From: Gracilinanus agilis
Taxonomy: Eukaryota
NCBI RefSeq assembly: GCF_016433145.1
Contig: NC_058132.1
Coordinates: forward strand, 165,123,025 to 165,187,024
Direction of reading: 5' to 3'
Length of the DNA: 64,000 nt
This document shows, piece after piece, positions 18,462 through 61,789 of the stretch; the first letter of the stretch is position 1, and the number at the start of each line of letters is the position of its first letter. The notes under the pieces were generated by a model, which worked only from the letters and a program-made list of their open reading frames with translations, made no database searches and was not told where the DNA came from. A program made the translations under genes and the position numbers.

Positions 18462-37046
<18,585 letters not shown>

Positions 37047-44619: not shown

Positions 44620-44831
44620 CAGGCAGGAAGCAACGATTTCCTCAATGCTGCTTCCCTCTTAGGACAGGATTTATGGTTACAAACAACCGGTGCCCCGCCC
44701 AGCCATCCTCCTCCCTTTCCTCTTCCCCCCTCCCTCAATGAGCTCAGAGCAGCCGAACGCATTGCATGGGATAGAAGGGTCTAATAGACCCAGGGGTCCT
44801 TTGGGCCTTGTATGGAGAACTGAGACCAGGA
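44620..44831 (+). promoter_or_regulatory. ROBO4 proximal promoter / 5'UTR
   Basis: ETS core CAGGAAGC at 44624-44631 and GC box GCCCCGCCC at 44692-44700, just upstream of exon 1. Eutherian ROBO4 promoters are known to use ETS and SP1 sites. Confidence 0.5.
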
Positions 44832-44901
44832 ATGAACCCAGAAAGAATGAAAGTCCCAGAGACCTGTTTGTCCTTGTCTCTCCTGCTCCTGTTTATCACA
44901 G
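44832..44901 (+). CDS. ROBO4: ROBO4 exon 1 (signal peptide)
   Basis: [23 protein letters not shown], 70 nt, donor CAG|GTGAGT, phase 1. Confidence 0.85.
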
Positions 44902-47218
44902 GTGAGTCTAGATTGATGGAAAGGGTCCCCTCTTCACCTTTCTTCCCTTTCTTTGTTCTATCTAGTATACTTGCCTTTTGATTAAACCCTACTGAAGAAG
45001 AGAGGTGAAGGATTCTACTGCTCTGCTTGGGGATATGAAGAAGAATATATGGCCTACTTGGCTCTCTGACAACATGAGGGAGATGGGGTAGAAAGGTTTA
45101 TAACTCAGGGATTTGGGGACTTGATGTATCCTGAGTAAAAGCACATAGATGAAGCTAACATTCAAATGAGAACTATAGTCGTTGTAACATCTTAGGAGTC
45201 CTCAAATGAAGGACCCTGAGCTAGACTCTATGGCCAAGGACTTCCCATCCCAAATCCTTCTCCATCCTGAGGGCCTGTCCATCAGATGTTTGACCCTAGC
45301 TAGGCTAAGCTGCCATGTTTCAGACCAATCTCCTTCCACCTCTTCCAAGGGCTTGGAAATGAGAAGTCGTTGAGCATTCCATCTCCCTTCCAACCTCCTT
45401 GGCCCAGACCACCTTCCTTCCTCTTGCATCTCACAGCCAAGAGCCAGAACTGCCCTGACCAAGACTTTAAATCAGGCCTGGGATCTCTACCTGTGAGTCT
45501 AGTAACCCATAGCTATTAACAAGTATTCTAGGATCTCTAGAATACTTTTTTGTTTGTGAGGGCCAATGCAAGAAAGATACCTCAGGGAGAGAGGATCTTG
45601 AGAGTAGGGGAGAGTCTGGAAATCAAAGGATTGCTAAAGGGGGGGGGACATGGAGGTCTATTTGGTGGGGACCCTACATTTGGAAACAAGGCGGTTTGAC
45701 TGAATGAATGAAAAGGTTAAATGATAAATAGGGAATTTTTCAATAGCATTTGGAGGGAATAACAGCTAATATAGAATCTTGTGGGAGTAGGAATGATTCC
45801 AGAGTAGGAAGGTAAGTTGGGAGTCCTATCTTTTCCCATATCTTCTACCACCTTTTCCCACAGCCTTTCATACTAGTTTCCAGCTTCAAGGCCAGGATGT
45901 GGTAGCAGTGGTAGGGGAGCAAGTAGTTTGAGAATTTGGATCACTCTAGGCCCAAGGTCTCCCAGAGAAAGGATGGATAGCCTTTGGTGCCAGAGTCATG
46001 ATATTATTGGTAATTTAGGTCACAGACTCTGAAGGAATTCTGATGGATTCACAGCAGTGCAAGGAATCTGCCCCCCCCCCAGTCCCTCTTCATTTTTGCC
46101 AATTAAACCAGATAAGCACCCCATTATACTATCATCCCTTAAATATACACTGGATTTTTATTTCTGCTCTAAATGTCTCCTATCTCACACATCTGCCTTT
46201 CTATCCCCTCCTTAGCTGTCAAGCATAGTTCAACTTTATTCAAAGATTTACTGACAAGGAAAGTATAAAATTTAGAATGTGAATAGTAGGGTTCAAGAAT
46301 GATCACATTGCTCAAAAGTCAACTGGCTGGCAAAAATTTCCCAACACTAAATTTCCTAATAAAATCTAGTCTCCTGATCATTTTATTCAGGTCTTGGTGC
46401 TAGTATATTCATGGCTTCTGTTATATTGGAATAAAAAACCTTCATCCTTTGAGGCAGTGCAATAAAATGGAAAGCATGCTAGAGCTACCATCAGGGAACC
46501 TGGACTCAAATCTTGCCAAATTCCAAGTCTTTGGAAAAGTCACTTATCCTCTCTGGCTTCAGATTTTGTTTTCATTTATACAGTGAAAGGGTTGGACTAT
46601 ACAATCTCTAGTATCTCTTTCCATTCCAAATCGTTGAGCCCATAAGGCAAGGAAGTATTCTCCCATTCTCAAACTTAGAAAGACCTACCATAAAACTCAG
46701 ACCAATCCCTTAGCTCCTTGTGCCATCTGGCCTGCCTCACCATGACAGCACGTTAGTGTTATAATAAGCTGTATGCCCCCAATGAAAGGGTATGGGACGC
46801 TGATATGCGGTTCAACTCCAGCAAACCATCTATACTTACACCATCCTCTTTCAATGTAAATGAAATCATAACAAAGACTATCATTATACCTCTTCCCTAC
46901 AAAGTATCAGAAAAATTTACATAGCCAACAACTTATTACAGAAAATATTAATTACCATTTCTCTCTAAAATTCATAACAAAGTAAAACTATATATATATA
47001 TACATATATATACATATATATATATAGAGAGAGATAAGTATATATAGCTATCATTTCATCCTTATTAACTTCTTGCACTTAGTAACCATTTCACAGCTAC
47101 ACTGAGGACTTTAAAGAGTAGATTAGTTAGCAGACAAATATAGGAACAGTAGACACACATTTTAGAATATCCCCAAACCTTCTCAAGCCAGTTTCTTTTA
47201 GTCTTAGGCTCTCCCTTC

Positions 47219-47272
<54 letters not shown>

Positions 47273-50200
47273 ATTTTGGGGAGCAGACACTGGAGGGGAA
47301 AATGGAAGGGAAGTCCCAGAGGCTGGACTTTCAAAATTGCTCCTTAAAACTAAAGATGTAACTCCCACAGACTCATGTTCAAATGTATATGGCACCTCCT
47401 CTGTACTATCTCCCCTACTTATACTCACACTTTGGTATTAGATACCCAAGTTGATGTTCAGCATCCCTACTGGACATATTGTTTAATTGGGCTTTCTTGG
47501 GTTGTTCCACTCTGCAGTTTAACTCTACATTGCCAGAACTAGTCATTTCTTATAGGAAAATAGTATTCCATCACAATAATATACCTCAATTTGTTCAGCC
47601 ATTCCCCAGCTGATGGATATTCCCTTCAATTTCCAAATCTGTGCCACCACAAAAAGAGCCTCTATAAATATTTTGTACAGATAGGTCTTTCCCCCTTTTC
47701 TTTCATCTCTTTTTGGATCTCTCTAATGCTAGGTTAAAGGGTTTTATAGTTCTTTGGGTATAATTACAAATTATTGTCCAGAATGGCTGGACCAACTTAC
47801 AACTCCATCAACAATGCATTATTAAGAACAACTAGGTGGCTAGTGGATTGAGAGCTGTGGCCAGAGATAGGAGGTTCTGGGTTCAAATCTAGCTTCGAAT
47901 ATTTCCTAGCTGTGTGATTCTGGACAAGTTGATTAATCACCATTGCCTAGGTTTTACCACTCTTCTGCCTTGGAACTAAAATTGAAAGTTAGATTTTAAA
48001 ACAACAACAACAACAACAAAAATCCAATGCATTAGGGTCTCTATTTTTTCACAGCCCCTCCAGCATTTTTTCCCTTTTTTCTGTCATATCATCTAATAGC
48101 AGTGTGAAGTGGCACTTCAGAGTTGTTTTAATGAGCCTTTTTCTGATCAATAGTGATTTGGAGCATTTTTTCATATTATCATTAATAGTTTTGATTTCTT
48201 CTGTCAAAAACTGCCTATTTGTATCCTTTGACCATTTTGTAATTTGGGGAATAAATGGCTCTTATTTGTGTAAATTTGACTTAGTTCCCTAAATAGTTGA
48301 GAAATGAGGCCTTTATAAAAAATTTACTATATATAAAATATTTTAAAATATTACTTTATTGTCTATAGCACCTTTTAGCAAAATACAGTTTCCCTGGCTA
48401 TCCCTTAATTAGGCCCATTTTTGCTTTTGCTATGTCTGAGATCAAAATGGTGCCTTTTTAACTTGCCTTTTTAACTTCAGCTAAAAGCATAATAGATTCT
48501 ATTCTAGCCCTTTATTTTAACTCTGTGTATGTCTTTCTGTTTTAAGTGTGTTTCTTCTAAATATGTTATTGGATTCTGGTTTCTAATTCATTCTGCTATT
48601 GGCTTCCATTTAATGGATGAGTTTATTCATTCGCATTCATAGTTGTGATTAATAACTATGCATTTCCCATCATTCTATTTTCTTTGTTTCTGATTGCTGC
48701 CTCCTTTAACCTGTTCTGCCTTTTATCACAGCCTGTTTTTTTATCTCCTTCTCCTCCTGCTTCTCTGTTGGGTAAGATAGATTTCTATACACAATTAATT
48801 ACATATACACATATATGTATATATATTCTTCCTCTTTGAACCAATTCTGATAAGATTGAGACTCAAGCATTGCCTATCAATCCCACTTCTCCCCTCCACT
48901 GTAAAAGCTTTCCCTTCCATGGCTCTTTTACATGAGATTATTTTCTCCATTCTTCCTCTCCCTTCTCTCAATGCATTTTTCTTTCTCATCTCTTTTTTTA
49001 TATCATTCCAACATAACTGATTCACAACCATGCCCTCTATGTGTTGTTGTTTGGTCATTTCAGTCATGCCCACTTTTCATTACTCTATTTGAGTTTTCTT
49101 GGCAAAGATACTGGAATAGTTTACCATTTCCTTCTACAGCTCATTTTTACAGATGAGGAACTGAAGCAAACAGGATTAAGTGACTTGTCCAGGTCACATA
49201 ACTAGGAAATATTTGAGGATAGATTTGAACTCAAGTCTTTCTGGAAAGACTCCAGGCCTGGCACTCTATCCACTCTACCACCTGGTTGCCCTATCTATGT
49301 AGATTCCTTATAACTGCCCTAATAATAATAAAATTCTTAGGAGTTACATGTATCATCTTCTCACATGGAATGTAAACAGTTTAACCTTAATTGAATCCTT
49401 TATGATTTCTCTTTCATGTTTGTTTTCTTATGCTTCTCTTGAGGTTTGTCTTTGAATGTCAAATCTTCTATTTAGCTCTGGTTTGGGGGGAATTTTTTTT
49501 GAGGGGGGAGTCAGGAATGCTTGAAAGTGCTCTATTTCATTAAGTATCCATTTTTCATCCAGAAGGATCATATTAAGGTTTGATGAGTAGGTTATTCTTG
49601 GTTGTAATCCAAGTTTCTTTGCCTTTCAGAATATCATATTCCAAGCCCTCCACTTTAATATGCAAGCTGACAAGTATTGTGTGATCCTGATTATGGCTCC
49701 ACAATATTTGAACTGTTTCTTTCTGGATACTTGCAAGGCTCTTTGGCCTGGGAGCTTTGGAATTTGGCTAAATAGTTTTTATTTGGGGATCTTTTTCAAG
49801 AGGTAATTGGTGGATTCTTTCCATTTTTCTTTTACCCTCTGGAACTAACATATCGTGGAAGTTTTCCTTTATAACTTCTTGAAATGTGATACCTAGGATC
49901 TTTTTTTTGGGACATGGTTTTAAGGAGTCCAATAATTTTAAAATTATTTTTCCTCAATCTATTTTCCAGATCACTTGTTTGATGAGATGATATTTCATAT
50001 TTTCTTCTGTTTCATCATTTTTTGGACTTTCCCCACTAAAACCCTTACCTTCTGTCTTGGAATTAATACTGTATATTGGTGCCAAGGCAGAAGAGTACTA
50101 AGGGCACGGAAATTGGAGTTAGGTGACTTGCCCAGGGTCACATAGCTAGCAAGTGTCTGAGGTCAGTTTTGATCCCAGGATCTCCCATCTCAAGGCCTGG

Positions 50201-53200
50201 CTTTTTTATCCACTGAACCACTTAGCTCTCCCCATTCTTTTGACTTTTAAAAAATTGTTCTTGATGTCTCATAGAGGCATTGGCTTCTACTTCCTCGATT
50301 CTAATTTTAAAAAAATATTTGCATCAGTGAATTTTTGTCTCTTTTACCATTTGGCCAATTCTGTTGTTTTTTTAATTGTTATTTTCTTTAGTATTTTTAT
50401 GCCTCTTTTATCAAACTGTTAATTTTCATAATTTCTTTTTGCATCACTCTCATTTCCTTTCCTAATTTTTCCTCTACCACTCTTATCTCTTTAACTCTTC
50501 CAAGAATTCTCATTGGGTTTGTATCTGATTTGCTTTTTTTCCTTTGAGGTCTTGCTTACAGCTATTTTCACATTGTTGTCTTTTTCTGAGTTTTATTGGT
50601 CTTCCCTGCCACAATAGTACCTTTTTCTGGTCAAGTTTGTTAGTTGGTTGGTTGGTTGCTCATTTCCCCATCCTATTTCCTGGCTTTGACCTTTTTTGTT
50701 AAAGTTGGGCTCTGCTCACCTGAGAATGTGGAGAAACATCATCCCAAGCTTCAGGCTTTTTTATGTTGCTACTTTCAGAGCTCATTCTGGAGGACTGCAA
50801 GTTTTTGGTGCTTCCAAGGTGATGTGAGCTGAGGAAAGGTATATGTTCTGGTTTTTGCTCTCATCTTTACCAAGGAATAGTCCCTAACTGACTGCAGCAG
50901 CAAGTGCTAGCACTCTTCTTGACCCTGGAATTTTGACCAGATCTCCTGCTCTCCTATGGCTTTAAGATAGTGCTCCTCTCCAATCTGAATCTATTACCCA
51001 GAACTAGGTATGGGTACTAGAGTTGCCAAATAGTATCAGGTCCTCCATCCAGTGCCAGCAAAGGGATTTCTATACATTTCTTTCTGACAAATTGTCTGAC
51101 CCCCTTACCATCTCTGAGATGAGAGCTCCCAAAATCGCTACTGCTTTTGCTTTAGCAAAAGGACTATGTGCTTCAGGTTGACTCCCACCTTGGTGTCAAA
51201 ATTTCTCCTGCTGGTACCCTAAGTTGTCTTAAGCTGGAAAGCTATCTTACTGGTTCTTCCACTACAAAATTTGATTTGAGCCATAATTTTAAAGTTATTT
51301 GGAGGAGAACATTAGGAGAGTTTAGCTAGGTTGCTACCTCTACTCCACCATCTTGGCTCCATCCCACTTCATAAAGTTATGACTTTGTACTTTGTTGGTA
51401 TATTAATACCTTGTATATTTGGTTATTCTTCCTTTACTTTCTCTGATTCTTTCAAGCTGGAGGAGGGAAAAGGGAAACACCAAATCCTCTTCCCCTCTAA
51501 ACATATACATGCACACAAATTTGTAACACAACCAAAGAGAGCCTCCTTTGGTGAATCTTCATCCAAGTCATACCTCCTAACCATGGGTATCCCTTTTCTT
51601 CTGGGTCCTCTTTTCTTCCCACTTTATACCATTTCATTTGGTGATCTCATCAGGTCTCACAGATTCATTTCTAATCTCTATGCTGACGATTCCTACACTT
51701 TCTTAACCAACCTTGACCTTATTCCTAACCTCCAATCACAAATCTCTGTCTATTAGATATCTAGAAGTGGAAGTCTCATAGACATCTTAAAAATCAATTT
51801 ATTCAAAACAAAACTCATTATCTTCCCCACCCCATCCCCCAATGCTTCCTCTCTCCCTAACTTTCCTATTACTGTCAAAGGCACCAACATCTATCTTCCT
51901 AGTCACTTAGGCTCAAACCCCAACTGTTATTTCCTCACTCTCTAACCCCTTCCCCAAGCCAATGTATTCTTTCTTCATAACATCTCTCCTATATGGCTCT
52001 TTCTCTCCTCTGACACTGCCACCTTTGGGCAGGCTCTCATCATCTCATACCTGGATTATTGCAATAGTTTTCTATTTTCTCTGTTTCAGGCCTTTGCCAG
52101 CTCTAGTCCATCCCTTATGTAAGTGTCAAGTTCGCCCTCCGAAAGTGAAGATCCAGGATCAAATAAAAAATTGTCTTTCATTCAAGGCCTTTCATAATTT
52201 GGCTCCTTTATAACTTGGTTCCATTCTTTCTACATCAAACTCCTACTTCCTATCCCCCATGTACTAGTGACATTGACTTCTTTGATGTTCCTTGCTCAAA
52301 ACATTCTGTCTCCAGACTGGATGTTTTCCCTGGCTATACCCATGTTTGGAATTCTCTTCCTATTCATCTTCATCTCCTGTTCTCCCTCTGAGGCCTTGAT
52401 AAAATACAATCTTCTACAAGAAGCATGTTCTGATCCCCCTTAATGCGAATGTCATTATTTTGTTGATTTTCTCCAACTTGTCTTTGACAGAGTTTGTTTC
52501 TACTTTGTTGTTTGCATATTCTCTCCTCTATTAGGCTGTGAGCTCCTTATGAATAGAGACTAATTTTTTGTTTAATTTGTGTTGTTGTTATTTTGCCTTT
52601 ATTTCTATTTTTAGTGTTTAACACAGTACTTGGCACATAGTAGCATAGTTCTTGGCACACGATTAAATGCTTATTGACTGTCAGACCCCATTCCCACCTT
52701 TGTCCACAGAGATTACTAGAGGATTAAACAAAGAGGAGCAATGCAGTGATTCCTGTGTATGTATGTGTGTATGCGCGTGCAAGAGTGTGCACCTGCTTGT
52801 GCTCCATGCACATAGCAACCAAGTCAGTAGGACAGAGGGAAAGCTGAGCAGTTTGGTGGTTGTTTGAGGTGAAGGGATGGGTGAAAAGGTCTATGGAGAA
52901 TAAGAAGCTGAGATAGCAATTGTGTGAAATCAGAGGTTAAGGTCAGGATGAATGGGGAAAGGGGGTCAAGGGTTAAATTGAATGGAGTGAGGATCTNNNN
53001 NNNNNNNNNNNNNNNNNNNNNNNNNNNNNNNNNNNNNNNNNNNNNNNNNNNNNNNNNNNNNNNNNNNNNNNNNNNNNNNNNNNNNNNNNNNNNNNNNNNN
53101 NNNNNNNNNNNNNNNNNNNNNNNNNNNNNNNNNNNNNNNNNNNNNNNNNNNNNNNNNNNNNNNNNNNNNNNNNNNNNNNNNNNNNNNNNNNNNNNNNNNN

Positions 53201-56200
53201 NNNNNNNNNNNNNNNNNNNNNNNNNNNNNNNNNNNNNNNNNNAGATAGACTGATACAGAGCTTCTGGGTATATGAGGACTCAGAACATGTGTATGAGATG
53301 AAGGATTGAGATTGGGATGTATGTGAGGTGAGGGGCTGAGTTTGTATGTGAGAGGGAGCATCTCTGTAATCAGCGAGTCTTTGTGGAACAATTGTCTAGG
53401 TGAGAAATGTGGGAAGTTGAAATCTCTTGGGTCCCAATATATGGAGAATGAAGAATGATGATGAAAGAAAAAGATTTCTGTAGGGTTAAGGCTTTAGGCT
53501 AAAAGCAAAAAAGGGGTTGGGAGGGAGGCCAAGAAGTTGAGAGGGTAGTTGTAGTTTCTTCAAATGACTGCTCCCTCTTCTCTCCCATTTGGGCTCCATT
53601 CCATCTCTTCTCCCCCTATAGAATCTCTGGTCCTGGCTGAGCCCCTGGAGCTGCTGGCTATGCATGTCCAACTGGAAAATGTGACTCTTTTCTCTACTGA
53701 CCAAACGCCTGGCCCAGTTGTATGGCTAACTTGGAAGGTAAAAAGGGTGATGAAATTAAGCAATGTTTTTGGAAAAATAAAGAAAAGCAATGCAATGAGA
53801 CCTTAAAATCTTTAATACCAGGGTTTTCCTGTGGCTTCTTAATTCCTTACCTTTTTCTATAGGCAAGTGGCCCTGCTGCTCCTGCAAAGGTCTATAAAGC
53901 CCTGTTCCGGGCCCGGCAATCTGCAGCAGGGGAGGTAGCAGGGCAGCCAGATGGCCAATGGAGTGAGTCCTTGCTGATGGGTAGACAGAGTGCAGAACTT
54001 CGGGGCCTTAGCTGGGGCTATGATTATGAATTTAAGGTGAGGCCATCTTCTGGTTCAGCCCAAGGCCCTGACAGCAACGTTCTCATCTTGAGGTTGCCAG
54101 AGCAAGGTAAGTTCCACATCTCCCAATGACAACACCCTTTTGACATCACGTAGGGACCCTCCAGCTCCTGACCTGGAATCTTTCCTAGCTTGCTCTAGAA
54201 CAGTGGTTCCCAAACTTTTTTGGCCTACTGCTCCCTTTCAAGAAAAAATATTACTTAGCGCCCCCTGTCACATACTATCACTGCCCCCTTACAGTTATTC
54301 ACCGCCCCCAAATGCACCTGTGGCATCACCGCCCTCCTGGATCACTGCAGCACCCACCAGGGGGTGGTGGCACCCACTTTGGGAATCACTGCTCTAGAAC
54401 CTCCCATGCTATTCCCTGTATGCCCATCCCTCTCAGGTTGCCAGAATGTTAGGTTCTACTCTTGAGGTGGCTTTTTCCCAGGACAAAGTCACTGTGGAAG
54501 AAGCCTCTGCTCCTGCCCAATGTGCTCAGGACCTCGTGCCAGCTTCTTTGGAGTTCTCTGCTCTTCAAATTTTTTTAATTCTGTTCCATTTTCCACAGCC
54601 CCAGATACCTCTCACAATATCCCTCAATGACTCACTTCTTTTCCTTCAGTGCCCAGTGCCCCACCTCAGGCTGTTACCCTGAACCCTGGAAATGGCAGTG
54701 TCCTGGTCAGCTGGGATCCACCTCCACCTGAGACTCACAATGGCATTATCCGTGGCTACCAGGTACACATTTCCCCTACCCTCATTCCGCAAGTCCCCAC
54801 ACTCCTTGATTCACATTGCCCCAGCTAGCCAGGCCATGCCTAGAGTTCTCCAAACTTATGGTGGGGGATGTGGAGAAGAAAGAAGGGCTATCAGAGATGG
54901 CACCTAGAAACAGATACAGATCCATGATTTCATAGATGTCAACATTTCCTCCATTGGTGAAGACTAATCAATTACTTTAGATCTTAAAGGGACCTTAGAG
55001 AGCCTCTACTCCAGTCCCCTCATTATTCAATGAGGAAATTGAAGCCAAGAAACATGGAGCAACATTCCCAAAGTCACATAGCTAGCTAGTGGCAGAGCCA
55101 AGACCAGGACTCAGGTCTCCTGCCTCCAAAGTTGGTGATCTTTCCAACTAACTACTCCAGGCAGTCTCTGTATGGAACAGGAAGAAAACATGGCTAGAAA
55201 TAAGGATTCTAGCCATGTTTTTGAAGCCCCCCAAACACCTTAGGCAGTGGCCTTCCTCCTCTCCTATCCTTCCCATCCTATGCTATGTATGGTTAACATG
55301 GGGGAAGTCTCTGTTGGCAGGAGAATCATAGGGTTGGCATCAGAGAAGTTGGAAGAGATTTCTCAGGATAATAAACAGCTAGGTTGATCCCGAGTATACA
55401 ATCTGACTTCAGAGTGTAGGACTCAGACCCTTGAAGATTTGAGAAGGGCACTTTGCCTACTGCTACACTGTATCCTTAGGTCTGGACCTTGGGCAATGCC
55501 TCACTGCCCCGTGCCAACTGGAGCGTGGTTGGTGGTCGCACTCAGCTGGAGATTGTAACTGGAATGCCTGGTTCCTATTGCATTCAGGTGGCAGCGGTCA
55601 CTGGAGCTGGGGCTGGGGAGCCCAGCAGTCCTGTCTGCCTCTCCTTAGGTCAGAGCAATATCTATCTTCTGGTAGACATCCCTCTACCTCCCCAAGCCTC
55701 CTTCCTTCCTTCCTTCCCTACTCTCACCTTCTTTTCTCTGTGTCCCAGCAGGCCCTTTTTGCCAGTCTTCCACATACCCTACATCCTTTCCTCTCCAGAC
55801 CTTTCCTTTCCTTGCCATATAACCCCTCCCTCACCCCAAATCCTCCCCCAATGAACTCCTATATTCTCTAGAGAAGGCCAACCGAGCCGCACGAGATTCT
55901 GTGGGCCTGGGTCCCCCAACCCTGGAGCGGCTTCAAGAAGCACTGCGCCGGCCAGAGGTGATCGCTAGTGGCGGGGCTGTGCTCTGGTTGCTGCTGTTGG
56001 GGGCTGCAGTTTGTATTCACCGCCGGCGCAAGGCCAGAGCCCACCTAGGCATGGGTGAGTGAGAAGTTGGGAGCTGAGTGGCACAATGGCATGTAGAGAA
56101 TGGACTAAATAAAGATAGGAAAGCTGGGTTGTGAGGAGCCAGTGGGCAGGAGGCAGGGGCTAGACAGGGATGTCCAGCCATCGGGTCCCTGGAATGCAGG

Positions 56201-59038
56201 ATGAAGCTTTAGGAGAGCCACTAGAATTCAGTTTCTGTTTTCCCCTTCCTCAGGTCTATACAGATACACCAGTGAAGATGCCATCCTTAAGCACAGGTGA
56301 GAGAAGGGACCTGTGGGGAACTGATGGGGCAGAGAGTATATGCAACAGAAGAGTGGATGGGGTGTACCCTTCTTGCCCTGGATTTTCTCTGTCTGGCTAC
56401 CAGTGAGTTTCAGATCCAGAAGACTGAATCTCACTATTTTTTACCATCCTGAGTACCAGCAGGGAAAACTGGGCCTCAGGTTCCTAGCTTCTCTACTGCT
56501 TCCAGAAAGCAGACTGGCATATGCTCAAATTAACTGCATTTGGGGTATAATGTCTGAAGTTTGAAATGGAAATTATGTTACAGAGTATCATTTCCCCCTC
56601 TGAAGTCTTTAAGTCAAGTAGCTTACGCTACATGTGCTATATTAAATATATGGCTAAGCCCTTTGGGCTCTATCTCCAGTGTATGAAAGTGGTCTAGGGT
56701 GAAGGTCCATCCCTGCCCATGATTCATGGAAACCTCACAGACCCCAGGCCAGAAGATCAGGGAGGCACCTCTAATTTCCCCCATTACATTACCATGTCCC
56801 AATCTATGCATTATTTAGGTTATCCGGGCCATGGTTAACTTGGCTAAGAGATTTCCAAGAGCACTGGATGTGGAATTAGAAAGACCTGAGTTCATATCCA
56901 GCCTCAGACATGTAATAGCTGAGTAATTATGGATAAGTCACTTTTCCTTTGCCTCAGTTTCTTCATCTGTAGCACCTCACATCCTTTATAAATCTTAAGA
57001 TGCCATGTAAATTCTATTATTATTATCTCAATCTTTCCTAAGACTTTTAAGTCCTCATCCTGTCTTCCATCTAGCTTGTGATATTTTCAGTTCTTGTAAA
57101 TGTATTCATCTCTGCTTCTCTTGCTCATCCTTACCTTCATTCTTGTGCTGATACTAGGACTTTTTCTTAAGGGATTTTTTTAATGCCTCCTAGATCTGGA
57201 GATTCTACTGTAGAAGGTAAGAGAATTCAGAACTGGAGGGGAGGTTTAGATATCATCTAATAATGAGATCACAGGAGCATAGCCTACAGATGAGGAATAA
57301 GGCCCAGAGGGATGAGTGACAAGATCACACAGGTAGTATAAGGAGCAGAGATGACTCAGATTCTCCCAATATCAAGAATGGTGAGGGGCAATGGAGAAGG
57401 AACTGAGCCTTGTGGTTAAGAACAGTCAAAAACATCCTTCCACAAATGTATCTTCTGGCTCTTAGAACTGGAGCCGTGAACTGAAGCCTTGGTTAGCTGG
57501 GACCTAACCCCATTTTGTGTTTCTGATTTCTCTAGGCTAGACAGAAGTGACTCTCCCTGGCTGGCAACCACATGGCGATCCACCTCTGGCTCTCGGGATC
57601 TCAGCAGCAGCAGCAGCCTTAGCAGCCAACTGGGAGGAGACACTAGGGATACGTTAGACTGTCGGCGTTCCTGTAAGCTCCCCCTCTCTAGACTGGGACC
57701 CTCTATTCCCAAAGCAAGGGCTTGGGTGATAGAATCAAAGCTTCAAGGAAAATTGAACTGGAGGAATGGGGGTAGGGGAGCTAACCTTAATGCTTACCTC
57801 TTCTCATTGCAGTGATTTCCTGGGATCCTCGAAGCCCTGGTGTCCCTCTTCTCCCAGACACCAGCACCTTTTATGGCTCTCTTATGACTGAGATTTCCAA
57901 TGGCCCTCTAATCCCCCCAGGCCCCAGGGCCCCACCTATCAGGCGGTTTCCACCTCAGCTGGCTAGGCTCTCTAATCCCTGGCCTAGTTTGGACAGTCTC
58001 TGCAATGCTCCAAGAATACCTTCTCCCCATCTCTCCTTGACTCCTACAGAAGCCTGGAGAATAGTAAAGAAGCAGGGTAAATTGTGTTCAAAGACAATGG
58101 CCTAAAGAAATAAATAGGGAAGAAGGGGGCTAATACAACAATTTTCACCAACTCTCTATCTTATCCAAAGACAAAAGTGGAGGGAATTGAGGTTTTTCTA
58201 GTTGTTAATGTCTAACTAAAGAAGAAGAAGAACACTAAGGGAAAAGTTTCCATTGAAGAGTCTCTAGTGCATGGAAAGAAGTTTACACAGATATCAAATG
58301 AAGTCCCCTGTTTCAATCAAGTCACTCTAGTCACAGGTTTTATTCTTATAAGAGACTGAGCGACATCTCAGGTCTGAAGATTGTCCTGACACAGATGATC
58401 CTCCTTACTGGTGTCAGTTGACCCATTATCTTGGTTGACTCTAACCTTGACTCTGCTTCCAAAGTCCCCTTAGACTTACCTAACATACATGGTCATTAGA
58501 GATTAAAAGCATTTTTTTTTTTTTGCATCGTGTGTGTGTATGTGGGGGGGGGAAGATATCGACAAGGGGAAGAGAATCAAGTAGGGAGTAGAGAGAAAGT
58601 GAGGATTAAAGACTTCTCAGGGTGGGCATGGGGACAATGTCTCTTTCTTTTCCTCTGATCCTTGATCCTTTGGAGATCATTTGGGATGAGTCCCAAGCTC
58701 CTCACATTCCCCAAACAGCTTCTCTGACCACTCCTTCTTTTTGCAGAGCTGCATCAGGCTAATAGTTCTCCTCTGCTCCGTGCCAATCACCCCGCAGGGC
58801 ACTGGGCCTGGGAGCTGGCTGGTGCAAAGGACTTCAAGAACACTTCCCAAGTCCCAGGTAAGACCCTTTAATGTGATCTGAGAGGGGACAGAAATCATGG
58901 GTTTGGGCACCCACTATCCCACATCATGTGTTTCTCAGTTTACGATCCTTCCCTTTGAGCTTCAATACCCCAGTTATTGAGTAGGATCTGGTTTGGATTG
59001 TAGACATTTTAGGGAATCCCTACTCAAATACATGGAGG

Positions 59039-59083
<45 letters not shown>

Positions 59084-61789
59084 CAGATTTATGGTGCTTC
59101 CACTCTGCTCCTGTGTTAAGAAAGGCCCTGCTACAGTATTCTAGTCTCCTATCCTCCAAACTCCTGATAACATTTTGATGCTTTTGGCTTCAAATTGCCA
59201 TGCCCCTTTCTCCTTTATCTTACCTTAGAACAGTGTGAATTTCTTACGCAAGGACAATTTTCAAGGAGAAGCATAAGATCAGAAATTATGTATAGGCAGG
59301 GTTGCCAAAAATATATGCCCCATGGTGAGCTGTACTTTCTTCAAGTCTTATAAATGTGCCTTAATTAGTTGCTCAGTCCCTCTTGTGCTGCCAGAAGTGG
59401 GGCATCACCTTGCTAAGACCATAGATCTGCCTCCTAGCTGCCTTACCTCTCCTTTGTCTTCTCTGCTCCAAAGGACCATTCTCCCATCCAGAATGCCAAG
59501 AGTGAATAGGTGGCTCAGCTCAGCTTCTGCATGATGGGTTTGGCCTACTGGTTTGTTTCTAACCATAGCCACAGCCTATGCTGAAGTTCCTATGTACCCT
59601 GTGCACCCTGACACCAGGGCTCCTCTAATATTGTACTGGGTGACCTCAGCAACAATGTCTTCACCCTCTGACTTGTTCTAGAACAGGTACACGTCAAACT
59701 GATAATAAATATCCCAGAACCAAAAACACTCCCAAAGTTCATGAAGACACCTTATTTCTTCACAGGCTAGGGCCAGGGGCTGCTGGGGGCCCCAATGTCC
59801 CTCACACCCTGGCTTGTGCTCTCCAGGAGCTGTACCCCGTACTCTGGCTGCCTGGCGTGCCATTGGACCCCAGCTTCTCAACCCCAGGAATGAGCTGGCT
59901 TCGAGGCCCCTTCCCCCAGCACCCCCTTCTCCCATCCGAGGGGCTTCCACTAAAGGCCAACAGAATCAGTAAGAGAGAATGGGGGAAAAGATATCCGGAG
60001 CTTTAGCTCCTTGGGAAGTCAGGAGTAAGATGGAATTACCAGAGATCCTGAGGTGGGAAGGGACTAAAGCCATTGAGGGCAGAGAAGTAAAAGGGGGCCA
60101 CGCTGACAAATCCATCTTCTTTCACTGACTAGATCCGGTAAAGACTTCATAGAGCCTCAGATTCCATCCTCCCTGCCCCTAGTGGCAGCCATCTCTCCCA
60201 GCCCCTTGGCCTCCTCCCTTTCTGGCCCCAGCCCAACCTCTAGCCGCCTGTCTAGCTCTTCACTGTCCTCCTTGGGAGATGAAAGGGATAATGTGTTGAC
60301 CCCTGAAGATGTGGCCCTGTGCCTGGAGCTCAGTGAGGATGATGATGAGACCCCCAGGTGAGTGACTAGGGGAAGGTTGAGGACGGGGTAGTGGGCTGGG
60401 GGAGGTAAACAACAAAACTGGATTCCTTCTGAAACTCGCAGGCCCCTAACCGGTCATTTCATGGTTGTAATGTAATGAAATGGAGACTTTTGAACCCTCC
60501 TCTAAAGTCTGTTTGCTACCCTAACACTTTATCCCCTTCCAGGAACAGTGGGACTCCTGTCCGAAGGGCCCCATCACCACCTACCAGCTATGGCTATATC
60601 AGCATCCCATCAGCCTCTGGATTAGGGGAGGTGGAGGGGAATGCAGGTGGAGCGGGACCAGAGGGAGGCATTCTGCTATGTCCACCTCGCCCCTGCCATA
60701 CCCCTACACCCAGTGAAGGCTCTCTGGCAAACGGTTGGGGTTCAGCCTCAGAGGACAATGCCTTCAGTGCCAGGGCCAGCCTTGTCAGCTCCTCAGATGG
60801 TTCTTTTCTTGCCGATGCCAACTTTGCTCATGCCTTGGCTGTGGCTGTGGATAGCTTTGGCTTTGGCCTGGAGTCCAAGGATCATGACTGTGTCTTCAGT
60901 GGTATGTTCCTCTGCCCTTTAAGTATCTTCAAAGTGATACCTCTTCTTCTTCTGATCATCTTCTAACTCCACTGGGAGGGTAACAAGCAAAGAATTCCAG
61001 ATTCTTGAACCTAGTTGTTATTCTATCTCCCTATCTCCAGGTCTTTGAACTCAGACAAATGTGGACAGTGGTTTCTTTTCTCAAAGATCTGCAAGAAAAT
61101 TATTCTAAAGTCTTCCGTTAGTTACTTTCTTCTAATGTTTCATACCTTTTCATTGCCAGCATGTTCTGTTTTCTTTCTAACTTCAGTTTCTCCAGCTGAA
61201 GTGTCTAGTATTTCCTCTTTTTCTGAACTCAAGGAAGACGGAATTGGCCCATGATATACCAAACAAGATGTAGATAATTCTTTCCATGTCACTATCAGAC
61301 AACTCAGGATTCTTTATATCCACCCACCCAAGGTCTCTTATTCCATCCATTCTGACACTGAGACCTTCGGCAGAGTGCCAAGTACTAACTGAGGGACACC
61401 TTTCTAATATCTTGTTCATTCCCATCAGATTTCTCTCCACCTCCTTCACCTCAAGATGACTTTGCCCTTACTTCTACCCTGACCCTGCCAGTGTGGGAGT
61501 GGAGTTCAAATTGGATTGAAGAGATGGAGAATAAATACAGTCATCGGCTATGTAGGGGGCTACCTTCTTCTTCCCCTGAGATGGAGAAGGGTCCATCCAG
61601 AGGGAGGCAGAAGACTGGCCCTTTTGTCCCTAAAACCCATGGTGAGTGTCTTTGTGGAATAGGGGAAGAAAGTAGTCGAGGCAGGGAGAAAGTATTACTC
61701 TTTGAGCGCAAAGTGGGTACCCCCTGGAAGTGAACAAATAGCAATGCCAACCCCATTTTAATTCAACTTCTTCATCTCTAGACTCTTGA
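44832..61789 (+). CDS. ROBO4: ROBO4, predicted Ig-less form: join(44832-44901,53622-53737,53863-54106,54650-54762,55480-55648,55872-56054,56254-56296,57536-57672,57813-58076,58747-58857,59827-59968,60133-60357,60543-60901,61429-61641,61782-61789), 2397 nt, 798 aa
   Basis: Every listed exon was translated by hand: open frame, GT-AG, compatible phases, homologous to recalled ROBO4 (two FNIII domains, [25 protein letters not shown]). The exon 1 to exon 5 junction and the last exon are inferred. Confidence 0.88.
45225..45550 (+). pseudogene. ROBO4: Decayed ROBO4 exon 2 (Ig1) remnant; 3' bound approximate
   Basis: [15 protein letters not shown]...[14 protein letters not shown] vs recalled MAQDSPPQILVHPQD...ARMSCQASGQPPPT. 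In-frame TGA at 45371-45373, frameshifts, TCESSNP* at 45489-45512 (vs TCEASNR). Confidence 0.9.
45864..46009 (+). pseudogene. ROBO4: Decayed ROBO4 exon 3 (Ig2, first half) remnant
   Basis: [22 protein letters not shown] then, after a frameshift, [11 protein letters not shown], vs recalled [24 protein letters not shown]...PTVSWWKDGKPL. Stops at 45929, 45947, 45978 and 45999. Confidence 0.92.
47221..47268. repeat. (CT)n microsatellite
   Basis: Seen directly. Confidence 0.95.
47500..51370 (-). mobile_element. Fragmented antisense LINE-1, interrupted by SINEs (about 47825-48000 and 50037-50235) and a MAR1 (49043-49291)
   Basis: T-rich L1-like 3' and 5' segments with nested SINE signatures; bounds approximate. 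Confidence 0.6.
51600..52683 (+). mobile_element. L2 LINE 3' portion
   Basis: ctctatgctgacgattcc (YADD-like RT motif) and L2-type tail cttggcacatagtag...ttaaatgcttattgactg. Confidence 0.7.
52710..52868 (+). pseudogene. ROBO4: Decayed ROBO4 exon 4 (Ig2, second half) remnant
   Basis: [16 protein letters not shown] at 52806-52856 vs recalled MCVATNSAGHRESRAAR; acceptor ctttgtccacag retained; TGA at 52845; internal GT-rich expansion. Confidence 0.8.
52997..53242. other. Assembly gap (246 N)
   Basis: Seen directly. Confidence 1.
53622..53737 (+). CDS. ROBO4: ROBO4 exon 5
   Basis: [23 protein letters not shown]...VVWLTWK, phase 1 to phase 0. Confidence 0.93.
53863..54106 (+). CDS. ROBO4: ROBO4 exon 6 (FNIII-1)
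   Basis: ASGPAAPAK...[14 protein letters not shown]...[12 protein letters not shown]. Confidence 0.95.
54201..54391 (+). mobile_element. hAT (Charlie-like) MITE in a ROBO4 intron, related to 5135-5327
   Basis: Same TIRs; perfect 8-bp TSD ctctagaa at 54193-54200 and 54392-54399. Confidence 0.92.
54650..54762 (+). CDS. ROBO4: ROBO4 exon 7 (FNIII-2)
   Basis: [38 protein letters not shown]. Confidence 0.95.
55480..55648 (+). CDS. ROBO4: ROBO4 exon 8 (FNIII-2)
   Basis: [18 protein letters not shown]...[13 protein letters not shown]. Confidence 0.95.
55872..56054 (+). CDS. ROBO4: ROBO4 exon 9 (transmembrane)
   Basis: [30 protein letters not shown]. Confidence 0.95.
56254..56296 (+). CDS. ROBO4: ROBO4 exon 10
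   Basis: [15 protein letters not shown]. Confidence 0.93.
56845..57010 (+). mobile_element. MIR
   Basis: gaaagacctgagttcatatccagcctcagac...gcctcagtttcttcatctgta core. Confidence 0.7.
57536..57672 (+). CDS. ROBO4: ROBO4 exon 11
   Basis: [30 protein letters not shown]...LDCRRS. Confidence 0.95.
57813..58076 (+). CDS. ROBO4: ROBO4 exon 12
   Basis: [23 protein letters not shown]...EAWRIVKKQ. Confidence 0.95.
58747..58857 (+). CDS. ROBO4: ROBO4 exon 13
   Basis: [12 protein letters not shown]...KNTSQVP. Confidence 0.92.
59039..59081. repeat. (GT)n microsatellite
   Basis: Seen directly. Confidence 0.95.
59827..59968 (+). CDS. ROBO4: ROBO4 exon 14
   Basis: [18 protein letters not shown]... Confidence 0.92.
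60133..60357 (+). CDS. ROBO4: ROBO4 exon 15
   Basis: [13 protein letters not shown]...[15 protein letters not shown]...TPR; acceptor position slightly uncertain. Confidence 0.88.
60543..60901 (+). CDS. ROBO4: ROBO4 exon 16
   Basis: [13 protein letters not shown]...[25 protein letters not shown]...DCVFS. Confidence 0.95.
61429..61641 (+). CDS. ROBO4: ROBO4 exon 17
   Basis: [11 protein letters not shown]...[15 protein letters not shown]..., donor G|GTGAGT. Confidence 0.92.
61782..61789 (+). CDS. ROBO4: ROBO4 exon 18 coding part (DS*)
   Basis: Strong acceptor ttcaacttcttcatctctag|AC TCT TGA; short terminal peptide as in eutherian ROBO4. Confidence 0.6.

What the first reader, a model, noticed from the sequence alone, without database searches (positions are those of the whole stretch)
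53622..53645. Start of ROBO4 exon 5 appears remodelled to complete the signal peptide
Seen: the joined product reads [35 protein letters not shown]. Recalled human exon 5 starts with the polar linker EPQDYTEPVELL. Here QDYT is replaced by LVLA, giving a V(-3)/A(-1) signal-peptidase site just before EP. In the ancestral gene the cleavage region (GMA|QD) lay in the now-dead exon 2. Inference: compensatory evolution after exon skipping, and independent support for the exon 1-5 junction being the functional one.
Basis: partly seen in the sequence, partly recalled or inferred. Interest (0 to 1): 0.7.

Follow-up and report, generated by a model that had tools for sequence, protein, structure and literature searches.

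The report
Marsupial ROBO4 signal-peptide end rebuilt from linker
In this opossum, as in every marsupial checked, the blood-vessel receptor gene ROBO4 has lost its two Ig domains, and the first residues of the next exon have changed from a polar linker to a hydrophobic stretch that probably now forms the cleaved end of the signal peptide; that role is plausible but unproven.

Summary
Window 53622-53645 is the 5' end of the first FN3 exon of an opossum ROBO4. It reads (G|AA)E-S-L-V-L-A-E-P and joins exon 1 (ATG 44832, donor 44901|44902) in phase.

- **Fossil exons:** the three Ig exons lie between them as decayed fossils with stop codons. One fossil still carries the old cleavage region, SMA|KD.
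- **Species comparison:** RefSeq models of eight other marsupial species make the same exon 1-to-FN3 join. In three dasyurids the same exon, with ESLVLAET, follows HEPACAM read-through sequence. All carry [SP]-L-[VIA]-[LP]-[ADV] here. About 100 eutherian sequences, echidna, turtle, birds, frogs, lungfish and coelacanth keep their Ig domains and have polar residues here.
- **Cleavage score:** a von Heijne weight matrix, recalled from memory and not SignalP, makes VLA|EP the top site in 7 of 9 marsupials.
- **Limits on "compensatory":** an ancestral-type start still scores above threshold (6.1-7.6 against 10.3). About 4-9% of random peptides score as well. Ala(-1) is lost in Dromiciops and Petaurus. 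All marsupials share one evolutionary event.

Verdict: a real marsupial-specific remodelling that is probably the new signal-peptide c-region. Adaptive compensation is unproven. The earlier scan note s1-153770, on this same window, reports the Ig loss.

The parts
44772..44774 (+). In-frame TAG that closes the upstream reading frame. Monodelphis has Q here, and its RefSeq model starts further upstream.
   Evidence: Sequence. tblastn of P0079 shows one stop in 44766-44927. ATG 44832 is therefore the first usable start in this species.
44832..44901 (+). ROBO4 exon 1 coding part. It encodes the signal-peptide n-region ([11 protein letters not shown]) and h-region ([12 protein letters not shown]) plus the first base (G) of a split codon. 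The donor is ACAG|gtgagt.
   Evidence: It is 21/23 identical to Monodelphis P0079.
45221..45370 (+). Fossil of exon 2 (first half of Ig1). It includes the old signal-peptidase region SMA|KD, has a weak purine-rich acceptor, and the frame ends at a stop at 45371.
   Evidence: tblastn with five eutherian N-termini, E 8e-6 to 6e-5. No Pfam Ig hit.
45480..45512 (+). Fossil of the Ig1 Y-x-C region. It reads [10 protein letters not shown] followed by a stop, and the conserved Tyr is lost.
   Evidence: tblastn against Choloepus GVYTCEASNP, 70% over 10 residues. Weak on its own (E 0.18) but in the expected position.
45878..45986 (+). Fossil of exon 3 (first half of Ig2). It reads [22 protein letters not shown]..., with two in-frame stops and a frameshift.
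   Evidence: tblastn E 4e-5 to 1e-3. Sequence.
52709..52867 (+). Fossil of exon 4 (second half of Ig2). It is 159 nt and keeps its acceptor (tccacag|) and donor (GAG|gtgaag). It reads ...[12 protein letters not shown], and the phase-1 frame ends in TGA at its last codon.
   Evidence: tblastn E about 0.5, weak but correctly placed. Sequence and splice sites read.
53600..53621 (+). Polypyrimidine tract and AG acceptor of the first FN3 exon.
   Evidence: tccatctcttctccccctatag.
53622..53645 (+). The finding itself: codons (G)AA TCT CTG GTC CTG GCT GAG CCC, giving E-S-L-V-L-A-E-P. It is the former Ig2-FN3 linker and is proposed to be the new signal-peptide c-region, with V at -3 and A at -1.
53622..53737 (+). 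It is 116 nt and ends ...TGGAAG|gtaaaa.
   Evidence: In the AlphaFold2 model of the Monodelphis orthologue the first FN3 strand starts 8 residues after the proposed cut.
53863..61640 (+). The rest of ROBO4: 12 further tblastn blocks covering FN3-1/2, the transmembrane segment and the cytoplasmic tail. All are open and 83-100% identical to Monodelphis ROBO4.
   Evidence: no stops in any block. Pfam fn3 hits.

Best explanation
The 24 bases are the start of the first FN3-coding exon of a marsupial ROBO4 that has lost both Ig domains. Exon 1 still encodes the start codon and the charged and hydrophobic parts of the signal peptide. It splices in phase (1-1) straight onto this exon.

The residues that once formed the polar Ig2-FN3 linker (E-P-Q/L-D-Y/H-K/T) are [S/P]-L-[V/I/A]-[L/P]-[A/D/V] in marsupials. 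They now sit where the signal peptide's c-region must be. The most likely reading is that signal peptidase cuts after this stretch, at VLA|EP in this opossum. That would leave a mature receptor beginning about 8 residues before the first FN3 strand.

Shown here: the sequence, the phase, the fossil exons, the restriction to marsupials, and the same join in other species' gene models. Inferred: that cleavage happens at this site, and, more weakly, that the substitutions were selected to restore a good site after the old one in exon 2 was lost.
For: - **Phase and sequence:**
- **Fossil Ig exons with stops, including the old SMA|KD site:**
- **Rest of the gene intact:**
- **Same join in other marsupials:** Monodelphis, tammar, Trichosurus, Macrotis, wombat, koala, Dromiciops, Petaurus and Sarcophilus. 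Pfam finds fn3 only in Monodelphis P0079, and the precomputed Pfam lists give fn3 only for the tammar and koala models.
- **Species with Ig domains are polar here:** echidna VETPASARDEP, eutherians EP[QH]D[YH][KT]EP, turtle and frog DPLDTGQ.
- **Weight matrix:** VLA|EP scores 10.29 in the segment identical to the window's and is the top site in 7 of 9 marsupials. The same matrix recovers GMA|QD-type sites in 6 eutherian controls.
- **Chance level:** only 4% of random 5-mers (9% with S fixed) score as high.
- **Possible site turnover:** in the two species that lose Ala(-1), a new Ala appears upstream in the same short stretch. These are Dromiciops SLA|LD, scoring 9.99, and Petaurus ISA|SL.
- **Structure:** the AlphaFold2 model puts LVLA outside the FN3 fold, in a low-confidence helix continuous with the signal peptide. 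The first strand starts at residue 38.
Against: - No SignalP, no RNA reads and no protein N-terminus data.
Column sums check at 161 except for column +1.
- Glu at -6 is absent from the 161 training sites.
- A second site, TES|LV, scores 6.3, so LVLA could instead be the mature N-terminus.
- An ancestral-type start already scores 6.1-7.6, and 67% of random 5-mers pass threshold 3.5. The remodelling was therefore not obviously necessary.
- Ala(-1) is not conserved in Dromiciops or Petaurus, and Petaurus has no site above 4.
- All marsupials share both traits, so the association rests on one event.
Confidence: 0.55

Rival explanations
1. Relaxed constraint. Once the Ig domains were gone, the linker had nothing to link and drifted. 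The signal peptide is cut upstream (TES|LV or similar) or at any of several adequate sites. LVLA is then just a floppy mature N-terminus with no selected role.
For: TES|LV scores 5.6-6.8 in five species. Ancestral-type starts already score 6.1-7.6. Of random 5-mers, 67% pass threshold. By my count, the hexapeptide has about 7 changes over 6 sites across marsupials, against about 8 over the next 12 sites.
Against: Four hydrophobic residues in a row have about a 2% chance from background composition. Hydrophobicity has been kept across all five marsupial orders sampled. Koala and wombat have Pro at the -1 position of the upstream site, which makes that site poor, yet they keep V-x-A.
Confidence: 0.25
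2. Uncleaved signal anchor. LVLA lengthens the hydrophobic segment so that the N-terminus stays in the membrane as a second helix.
For: AlphaFold2 draws one continuous helix over residues 15-35.
Against: The helix has pLDDT of only about 50. Two Glu residues interrupt it. A canonical -3/-1 site is present. The h-region from exon 1 is only 11-12 residues, typical of cleaved signals.
Confidence: 0.07
3. Selection at the RNA level. The first bases of the exon changed to strengthen exon definition across the new 8.7 kb intron, and the amino-acid change is a by-product.
For: None directly. The intron is long, and the fossil exon 4 keeps good splice sites that must be outcompeted.
Against: The acceptor already has a strong polypyrimidine tract. 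The changes are coherent at the protein level, all moving towards hydrophobic or small residues, in species with different residues.
Confidence: 0.05
4. The exon 1-5 join is an annotation artefact, and the real protein starts elsewhere, for example as a HEPACAM read-through or from an unseen first exon.
For: Dasyurid RefSeq isoforms are HEPACAM-ROBO4 chimeras. No reads were laid here. A 246-base N run lies 380 bases upstream.
Against: Nine species' models from NCBI and other pipelines make the same join. The phases match. Exon 1 is conserved as an open signal-peptide-like sequence. Sarcophilus also has exon-1-initiated models (P0226/P0227).
Confidence: 0.05

Closest known systems
Eutherian ROBO4 signal peptide (for example gorilla G3RGN3, P0002)
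   Same: Homologous exon 1 with the same length and type of n- and h-regions (LPLLLLLIMG against [11 protein letters not shown]). Ala at -1. The same phase-1 donor.
   Different: In eutherians the c-region and cut site (GGMA|QD) are encoded by exon 2 ahead of Ig1. Here they are encoded by the former Ig2-FN3 linker, four exons downstream in the ancestral gene.
Annotated marsupial ROBO4 proteins (XP_007495122.2 Monodelphis, XP_072467545.1 tammar, XP_020856243.1 koala, XP_027691063.1 wombat and others)
   Same: The same exon 1-to-FN3 join and the same [SP]L[VIA][LP][ADV] start. Pfam finds fn3 only where it was checked.
   Different: Several models begin at an upstream ATG that is closed by a stop in this window. 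The databases record the models, but I found no paper on the Ig loss or the remodelled start.
Stepwise domain loss in vertebrate Robo4 (review PMC10084454)
   Same: [quoted passage not shown] Pfam here gives 3 Ig in turtle, frog and lungfish and 2 in eutherians and echidna.
   Different: Marsupials take this to zero Ig domains, which the review does not mention. That forces the signal peptide to be completed by a different exon.
In-frame skipping of phase 1-1 Ig exons (eutherian ROBO4 isoforms lacking Ig2, for example Urocitellus X3 P0099)
   Same: The same symmetric exon phases allow clean removal of Ig modules and use the same acceptor.
   Different: Those are predicted alternative isoforms that keep exon 2 and its cleavage site. 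Here the skipped exons are dead, so the skip is constitutive.

Membership tests
Cleavable eukaryotic (Sec/SPase I) signal peptide | Lies at the extreme N-terminus, directly after a usable start codon | tested here: met
   ATG 44832 is the first ATG after the in-frame TAG at 44772. Trichosurus and Macrotis models start at the same Met.
Cleavable eukaryotic (Sec/SPase I) signal peptide | Hydrophobic h-region of about 7-15 residues preceded by a short n-region with positive charge | tested here: met
   [11 protein letters not shown] (one R, one K) followed by [12 protein letters not shown].
Cleavable eukaryotic (Sec/SPase I) signal peptide | c-region of 3-7 residues with small neutral residues at -1 and -3 and no Pro at +1 | tested here: met
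   E-S-L-V-L-A|E-P has V at -3, A at -1 and E at +1. Weight-matrix score is 10.29 against a 3.5 threshold, with the matrix recalled from memory. The feature is not met at the homologous position in Dromiciops (D at -1) or Petaurus (V at -1).
Cleavable eukaryotic (Sec/SPase I) signal peptide | Actual cleavage by signal peptidase at the predicted bond | not testable with these tools
   This needs SignalP-class predictors at the least, and N-terminal sequencing or mass spectrometry for proof.
ROBO4 orthologue | High identity to annotated ROBO4 over the FN3, transmembrane and cytoplasmic exons, in conserved HEPACAM-ROBO4-ROBO3 order | tested here: met
Identity to Monodelphis ROBO4 is 83-100% over 12 exon blocks with no stops. 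The exhaustive search gave ROBO4 as the top hits. HEPACAM lies at 18.4-36.6 kb on the same strand.
ROBO4 orthologue | Two N-terminal Ig domains, as in eutherian ROBO4 | tested here: not met
   Only decayed fossils with stops remain. There are no Pfam Ig hits in the window fossil or in marsupial proteins. This is an orthologue with a reduced architecture.
Compensatory (adaptive) substitution after exon loss | The derived state improves function over the ancestral state in the new context and is maintained by selection | tested here: inconclusive
   The score rises from 6.1-7.6 to 10.3 and sits in the top 4-9% of random peptides. Hydrophobicity is kept in all marsupials. Against that, this is a single evolutionary event, no codon-level test was possible, and the ancestral state already scores above threshold.

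The most novel reading that the evidence does not exclude
In the marsupial stem lineage ROBO4 lost both Ig domains, and selection rebuilt a signal-peptidase site out of the former inter-domain linker. That site has since turned over. Dromiciops (V to A plus A to D, new SLA| site) and Petaurus (E to A plus A to V, new ISA| site) each lost the original Ala(-1) and gained a new Ala a few residues upstream. This would be a dated natural example of a signal-peptide c-region arising de novo and drifting under stabilising selection.
Probability: 0.3. Interest if true: 0.55.

Novelty: new variant of a known kind. Interest (0 to 1): 0.4.

Why it matters
ROBO4 is a vascular-endothelial receptor, and what its ectodomain binds is debated. 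Marsupials appear to run it with no Ig domains at all, which is a natural deletion experiment.

For such a protein to reach the membrane correctly, its signal peptide must still be processed. This finding points to the exact residues that probably took over that job after the original cleavage site died with exon 2.

It is a small, testable case of how a secretory signal is repaired after exon loss. It also gives a concrete prediction for the mature N-terminus (EPLELL...), which proteomics can check. On its own it is a modest evolutionary detail. Its value depends mostly on the larger Ig-loss observation, and those gene models are already in public annotation.

Tried and rejected
**RNA evidence**
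- The look-up of sequencing runs listed no run on record as RNA. Three small runs of the same organism (X22-X24, holding 0.25-0.36 of the words) might be RNA.
No reads were laid.
- The later local BLAST subjects left them out.

**DNA of other marsupial loci**
- The look-up of encoding contigs for Monodelphis and wombat returned gene tables but no DNA because the files were too large.
- As a result I could not run a codon-level dN/dS test, check for shared disabling mutations, or compare nucleotides at the acceptor.

**Marsupial transcript fragments**
- A search with the N-terminal 178 residues of P0079 found only eutherian-level hits of 66% identity or less.

**Other checks**
- Pfam on single exons gave nothing useful.
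- Three literature searches found no paper on marsupial ROBO4.
- I first read Tasmanian devil isoform X1 (1099 aa, with Ig domains) as a marsupial that keeps ROBO4 Ig exons. I rejected that reading. Its N-terminal 320 residues are HEPACAM, which lies upstream in this window, fused to the same FN3 exon.
- The wombat Ensembl models of 935 and 944 aa thread through the fossils but match only half an Ig profile, below Pfam's cut-off.

- The window's exon 1 + exon 5 model was never sent to a search. Scoring used the Monodelphis protein P0079, whose -13..+2 window around both candidate sites is identical to what the window's two exons encode.
- The N run at 52997-53242 was left unfilled.

Full report
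**What is at the coordinates**

The window carries a ROBO4 orthologue on the + strand. An earlier scan note calls the genome an opossum's. The sequence is 83-100% identical, exon by exon, to Monodelphis domestica ROBO4 (P0079) and has no stop in any of 12 downstream blocks. It is not identical to that model: 2 of 23 exon-1 residues and 5 of 39 exon-5 residues differ.

- At 53621|53622 a strong polypyrimidine tract ends in tatag, and the exon opens AA TCT CTG GTC CTG GCT GAG CCC.
- Exon 1 starts at ATG 44832 and ends ATC ACA G|gtgagt at 44901. That is 70 nt, so it ends in phase 1.
- G plus AA gives Glu, and the reading continues [11 protein letters not shown].

**The Ig exons are dead**

tblastn of five eutherian N-termini against 44902-53621, leaving out 50116-50157, finds four fossil pieces:

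- 45221-45340: [16 protein letters not shown]..., matching GMAQDSPPQILVHP at E 8e-6. The frame is closed at 45371.
- 45480-45512: [10 protein letters not shown] followed by a stop.
- 45878-45976: [22 protein letters not shown], at E 4e-5 to 1e-3.
- 52709-52867: a 159-nt remnant of the second Ig2 exon. It keeps its acceptor and donor but has a stop.

The first fossil still shows the old signal-peptidase region (SMA|KD).

**Comparison across species**

An exhaustive protein search with the C-terminal exon, followed by word searches, returned ROBO4 from many vertebrates.

Nine marsupial species' models join exon 1 directly to this exon. Pfam finds fn3 only where it was checked. The species are Monodelphis, tammar, Trichosurus, Macrotis, wombat, koala, Dromiciops, Petaurus and Sarcophilus. 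Their junctions read:

| Species | Junction |
|---|---|
| Monodelphis (and the window) | [11 protein letters not shown] |
| tammar | [11 protein letters not shown] |
| Trichosurus | [11 protein letters not shown] |
| Macrotis | FIR-ESLILAEP |
| koala | FIT-EPLVLAEP |
| wombat | FIT-EPLVPAEP |
| Dromiciops | FIT-ESLALDEP |
| Petaurus | FIS-ASLVLVEP |
| Sarcophilus | FIT-ESLVLAET |

The apparent exception was Tasmanian devil isoform X1, which has Ig domains. It is a HEPACAM-ROBO4 read-through chimera: its first ~320 residues map to HEPACAM at 18.4-36.6 kb of this window.

Species that keep ROBO4 Ig domains have polar or small residues at this position:

- Echidna: VETPASARDEP, with two intact Ig domains.
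- Eutherians: EP[QH]D[YH][KT]EP.
- Turtle and frogs: DPLDTGQ.
- Coelacanth: DVADAGQ.
- Lungfish: DDLDTGQ.

Over about 100 non-marsupial entries the four residues average -1.1 to -4.1 on the Kyte-Doolittle scale. In marsupials they average +1.5 to +4.0. The Leu at the third position may be ancestral, since turtle, frog and elephant have it. The clearly derived changes are D to V, Y/H/T to L and K/T/G to A.

**Is it a signal-peptidase site?**

SignalP is not among the tools. Fourteen of its 15 columns sum to the expected 161; the +1 column sums to 167.

- The matrix recovers the expected GMA|QD-type site in six eutherian controls, with scores of 8-16.
- I used Monodelphis P0079 as a proxy. Its -13..+2 windows are identical to what the window's exons encode.
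- VLA|EP scores 10.29 and TES|LV scores 6.26.
- The homologous V/I-x-A|E site is the best site in 7 of 9 marsupials.
- Dromiciops has its best site two residues earlier (SLA|LD, 9.99).
- Petaurus has nothing above 4.

An AlphaFold2 model of residues 1-250 has mean pLDDT 79.5. It places LVLA in a low-confidence helix continuous with the signal peptide, and the first FN3 strand starts at residue 38. Cutting at 29|30 would therefore leave the domain intact.

**Was it compensatory?**

The evidence here is weaker.

- Placing eutherian or outgroup linker starts behind the same exon 1 still gives above-threshold sites: TEP|QD 6.1, TES|QD 7.56, and up to 8.4 with the coelacanth start.
- Replacing the five residues with random ones drawn from background composition gives a best site of 3.5 or more in 67% of trials. 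It reaches the observed 10.29 in 4% of trials, or 9% if Ser is kept.
- The marsupial sequence is thus a better-than-typical site, but a workable site was likely available without it.
- Ig loss and LVLA are shared by all marsupial orders sampled, so they represent one co-occurrence, not replicated evidence.

Two observations lean towards selection:

- Hydrophobicity is kept in all sampled marsupial orders.
- The two species that lose Ala(-1) each gain a new Ala a few residues upstream, giving an alternative -3/-1 motif.

**What could not be done**

- No run is on record as RNA.
I worked beside those places afterwards.
- No marsupial transcript fragments were found.
- Three literature searches found no paper on marsupial ROBO4.
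[quoted passage not shown] Pfam here counts 3 Ig in turtle, frog and lungfish, 2 in eutherians and echidna, and 0 in marsupials.

**Verdict**

The best reading, at about 0.55, is that these residues now form the c-region and cut site of the ROBO4 signal peptide. That they were selected as compensation is plausible, at about 0.3, but unproven. The main rival is drift of a linker freed from constraint, with cleavage upstream or nearby.

The Ig-less gene models are already in public annotation. The remodelled start seems not to have been described.

Noticed in passing
window 18462-36588 (+); proteins P0080, P0225, P0228, P0229: HEPACAM lies upstream of ROBO4 on the same strand. RefSeq 'ROBO4' isoforms of Sarcophilus, Sminthopsis and Antechinus are HEPACAM-ROBO4 read-through chimeras. 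They join at the same FN3-exon acceptor, or at a site about 9 codons (27 nt) upstream of it ([17 protein letters not shown]), so their Ig domains are not ROBO4's.
   Followed up: partly
window 44766-44774: ATG GGA TAG: the upstream ATG that several marsupial RefSeq models use as the start is followed here by a stop two codons later. It is a 2-codon upstream ORF in this species, which suggests the N-terminal extensions in those models are not conserved coding sequence.
   Followed up: partly
window 52709-52867: The fossil of the last Ig2 exon keeps a consensus acceptor and donor and a symmetric 159-nt length. In the phase-1 frame its only stop is the final codon. If spliced in, it would act as a poison exon. 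Its inclusion level is unknown.
   Followed up: no
window 53564-53621: An ATG in the intron is in frame with the FN3 exon ([25 protein letters not shown]...). It covers the same intronic stretch that the Sminthopsis and Antechinus models translate. It has no signal peptide.
   Followed up: no
window 52997-53242: A 246-base N run sits in the last fossil intron, 380 bases upstream of the exon.
   Followed up: no
proteins P0221, P0222 (wombat Ensembl models): The wombat exon-2 fossil is better preserved than the opossum's (DSMAKDSPPQVLFHPEDP...[22 protein letters not shown]). It still matches the first half of an Ig profile (E 1.5e-5, below the cut-off), so decay has gone further in this opossum than in the wombat.
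   Followed up: partly
window 47200-47280: A (GA/TC)n microsatellite lies in the 6.7 kb of repeat-rich sequence that now separates the two Ig2 fossil exons.
   Followed up: no
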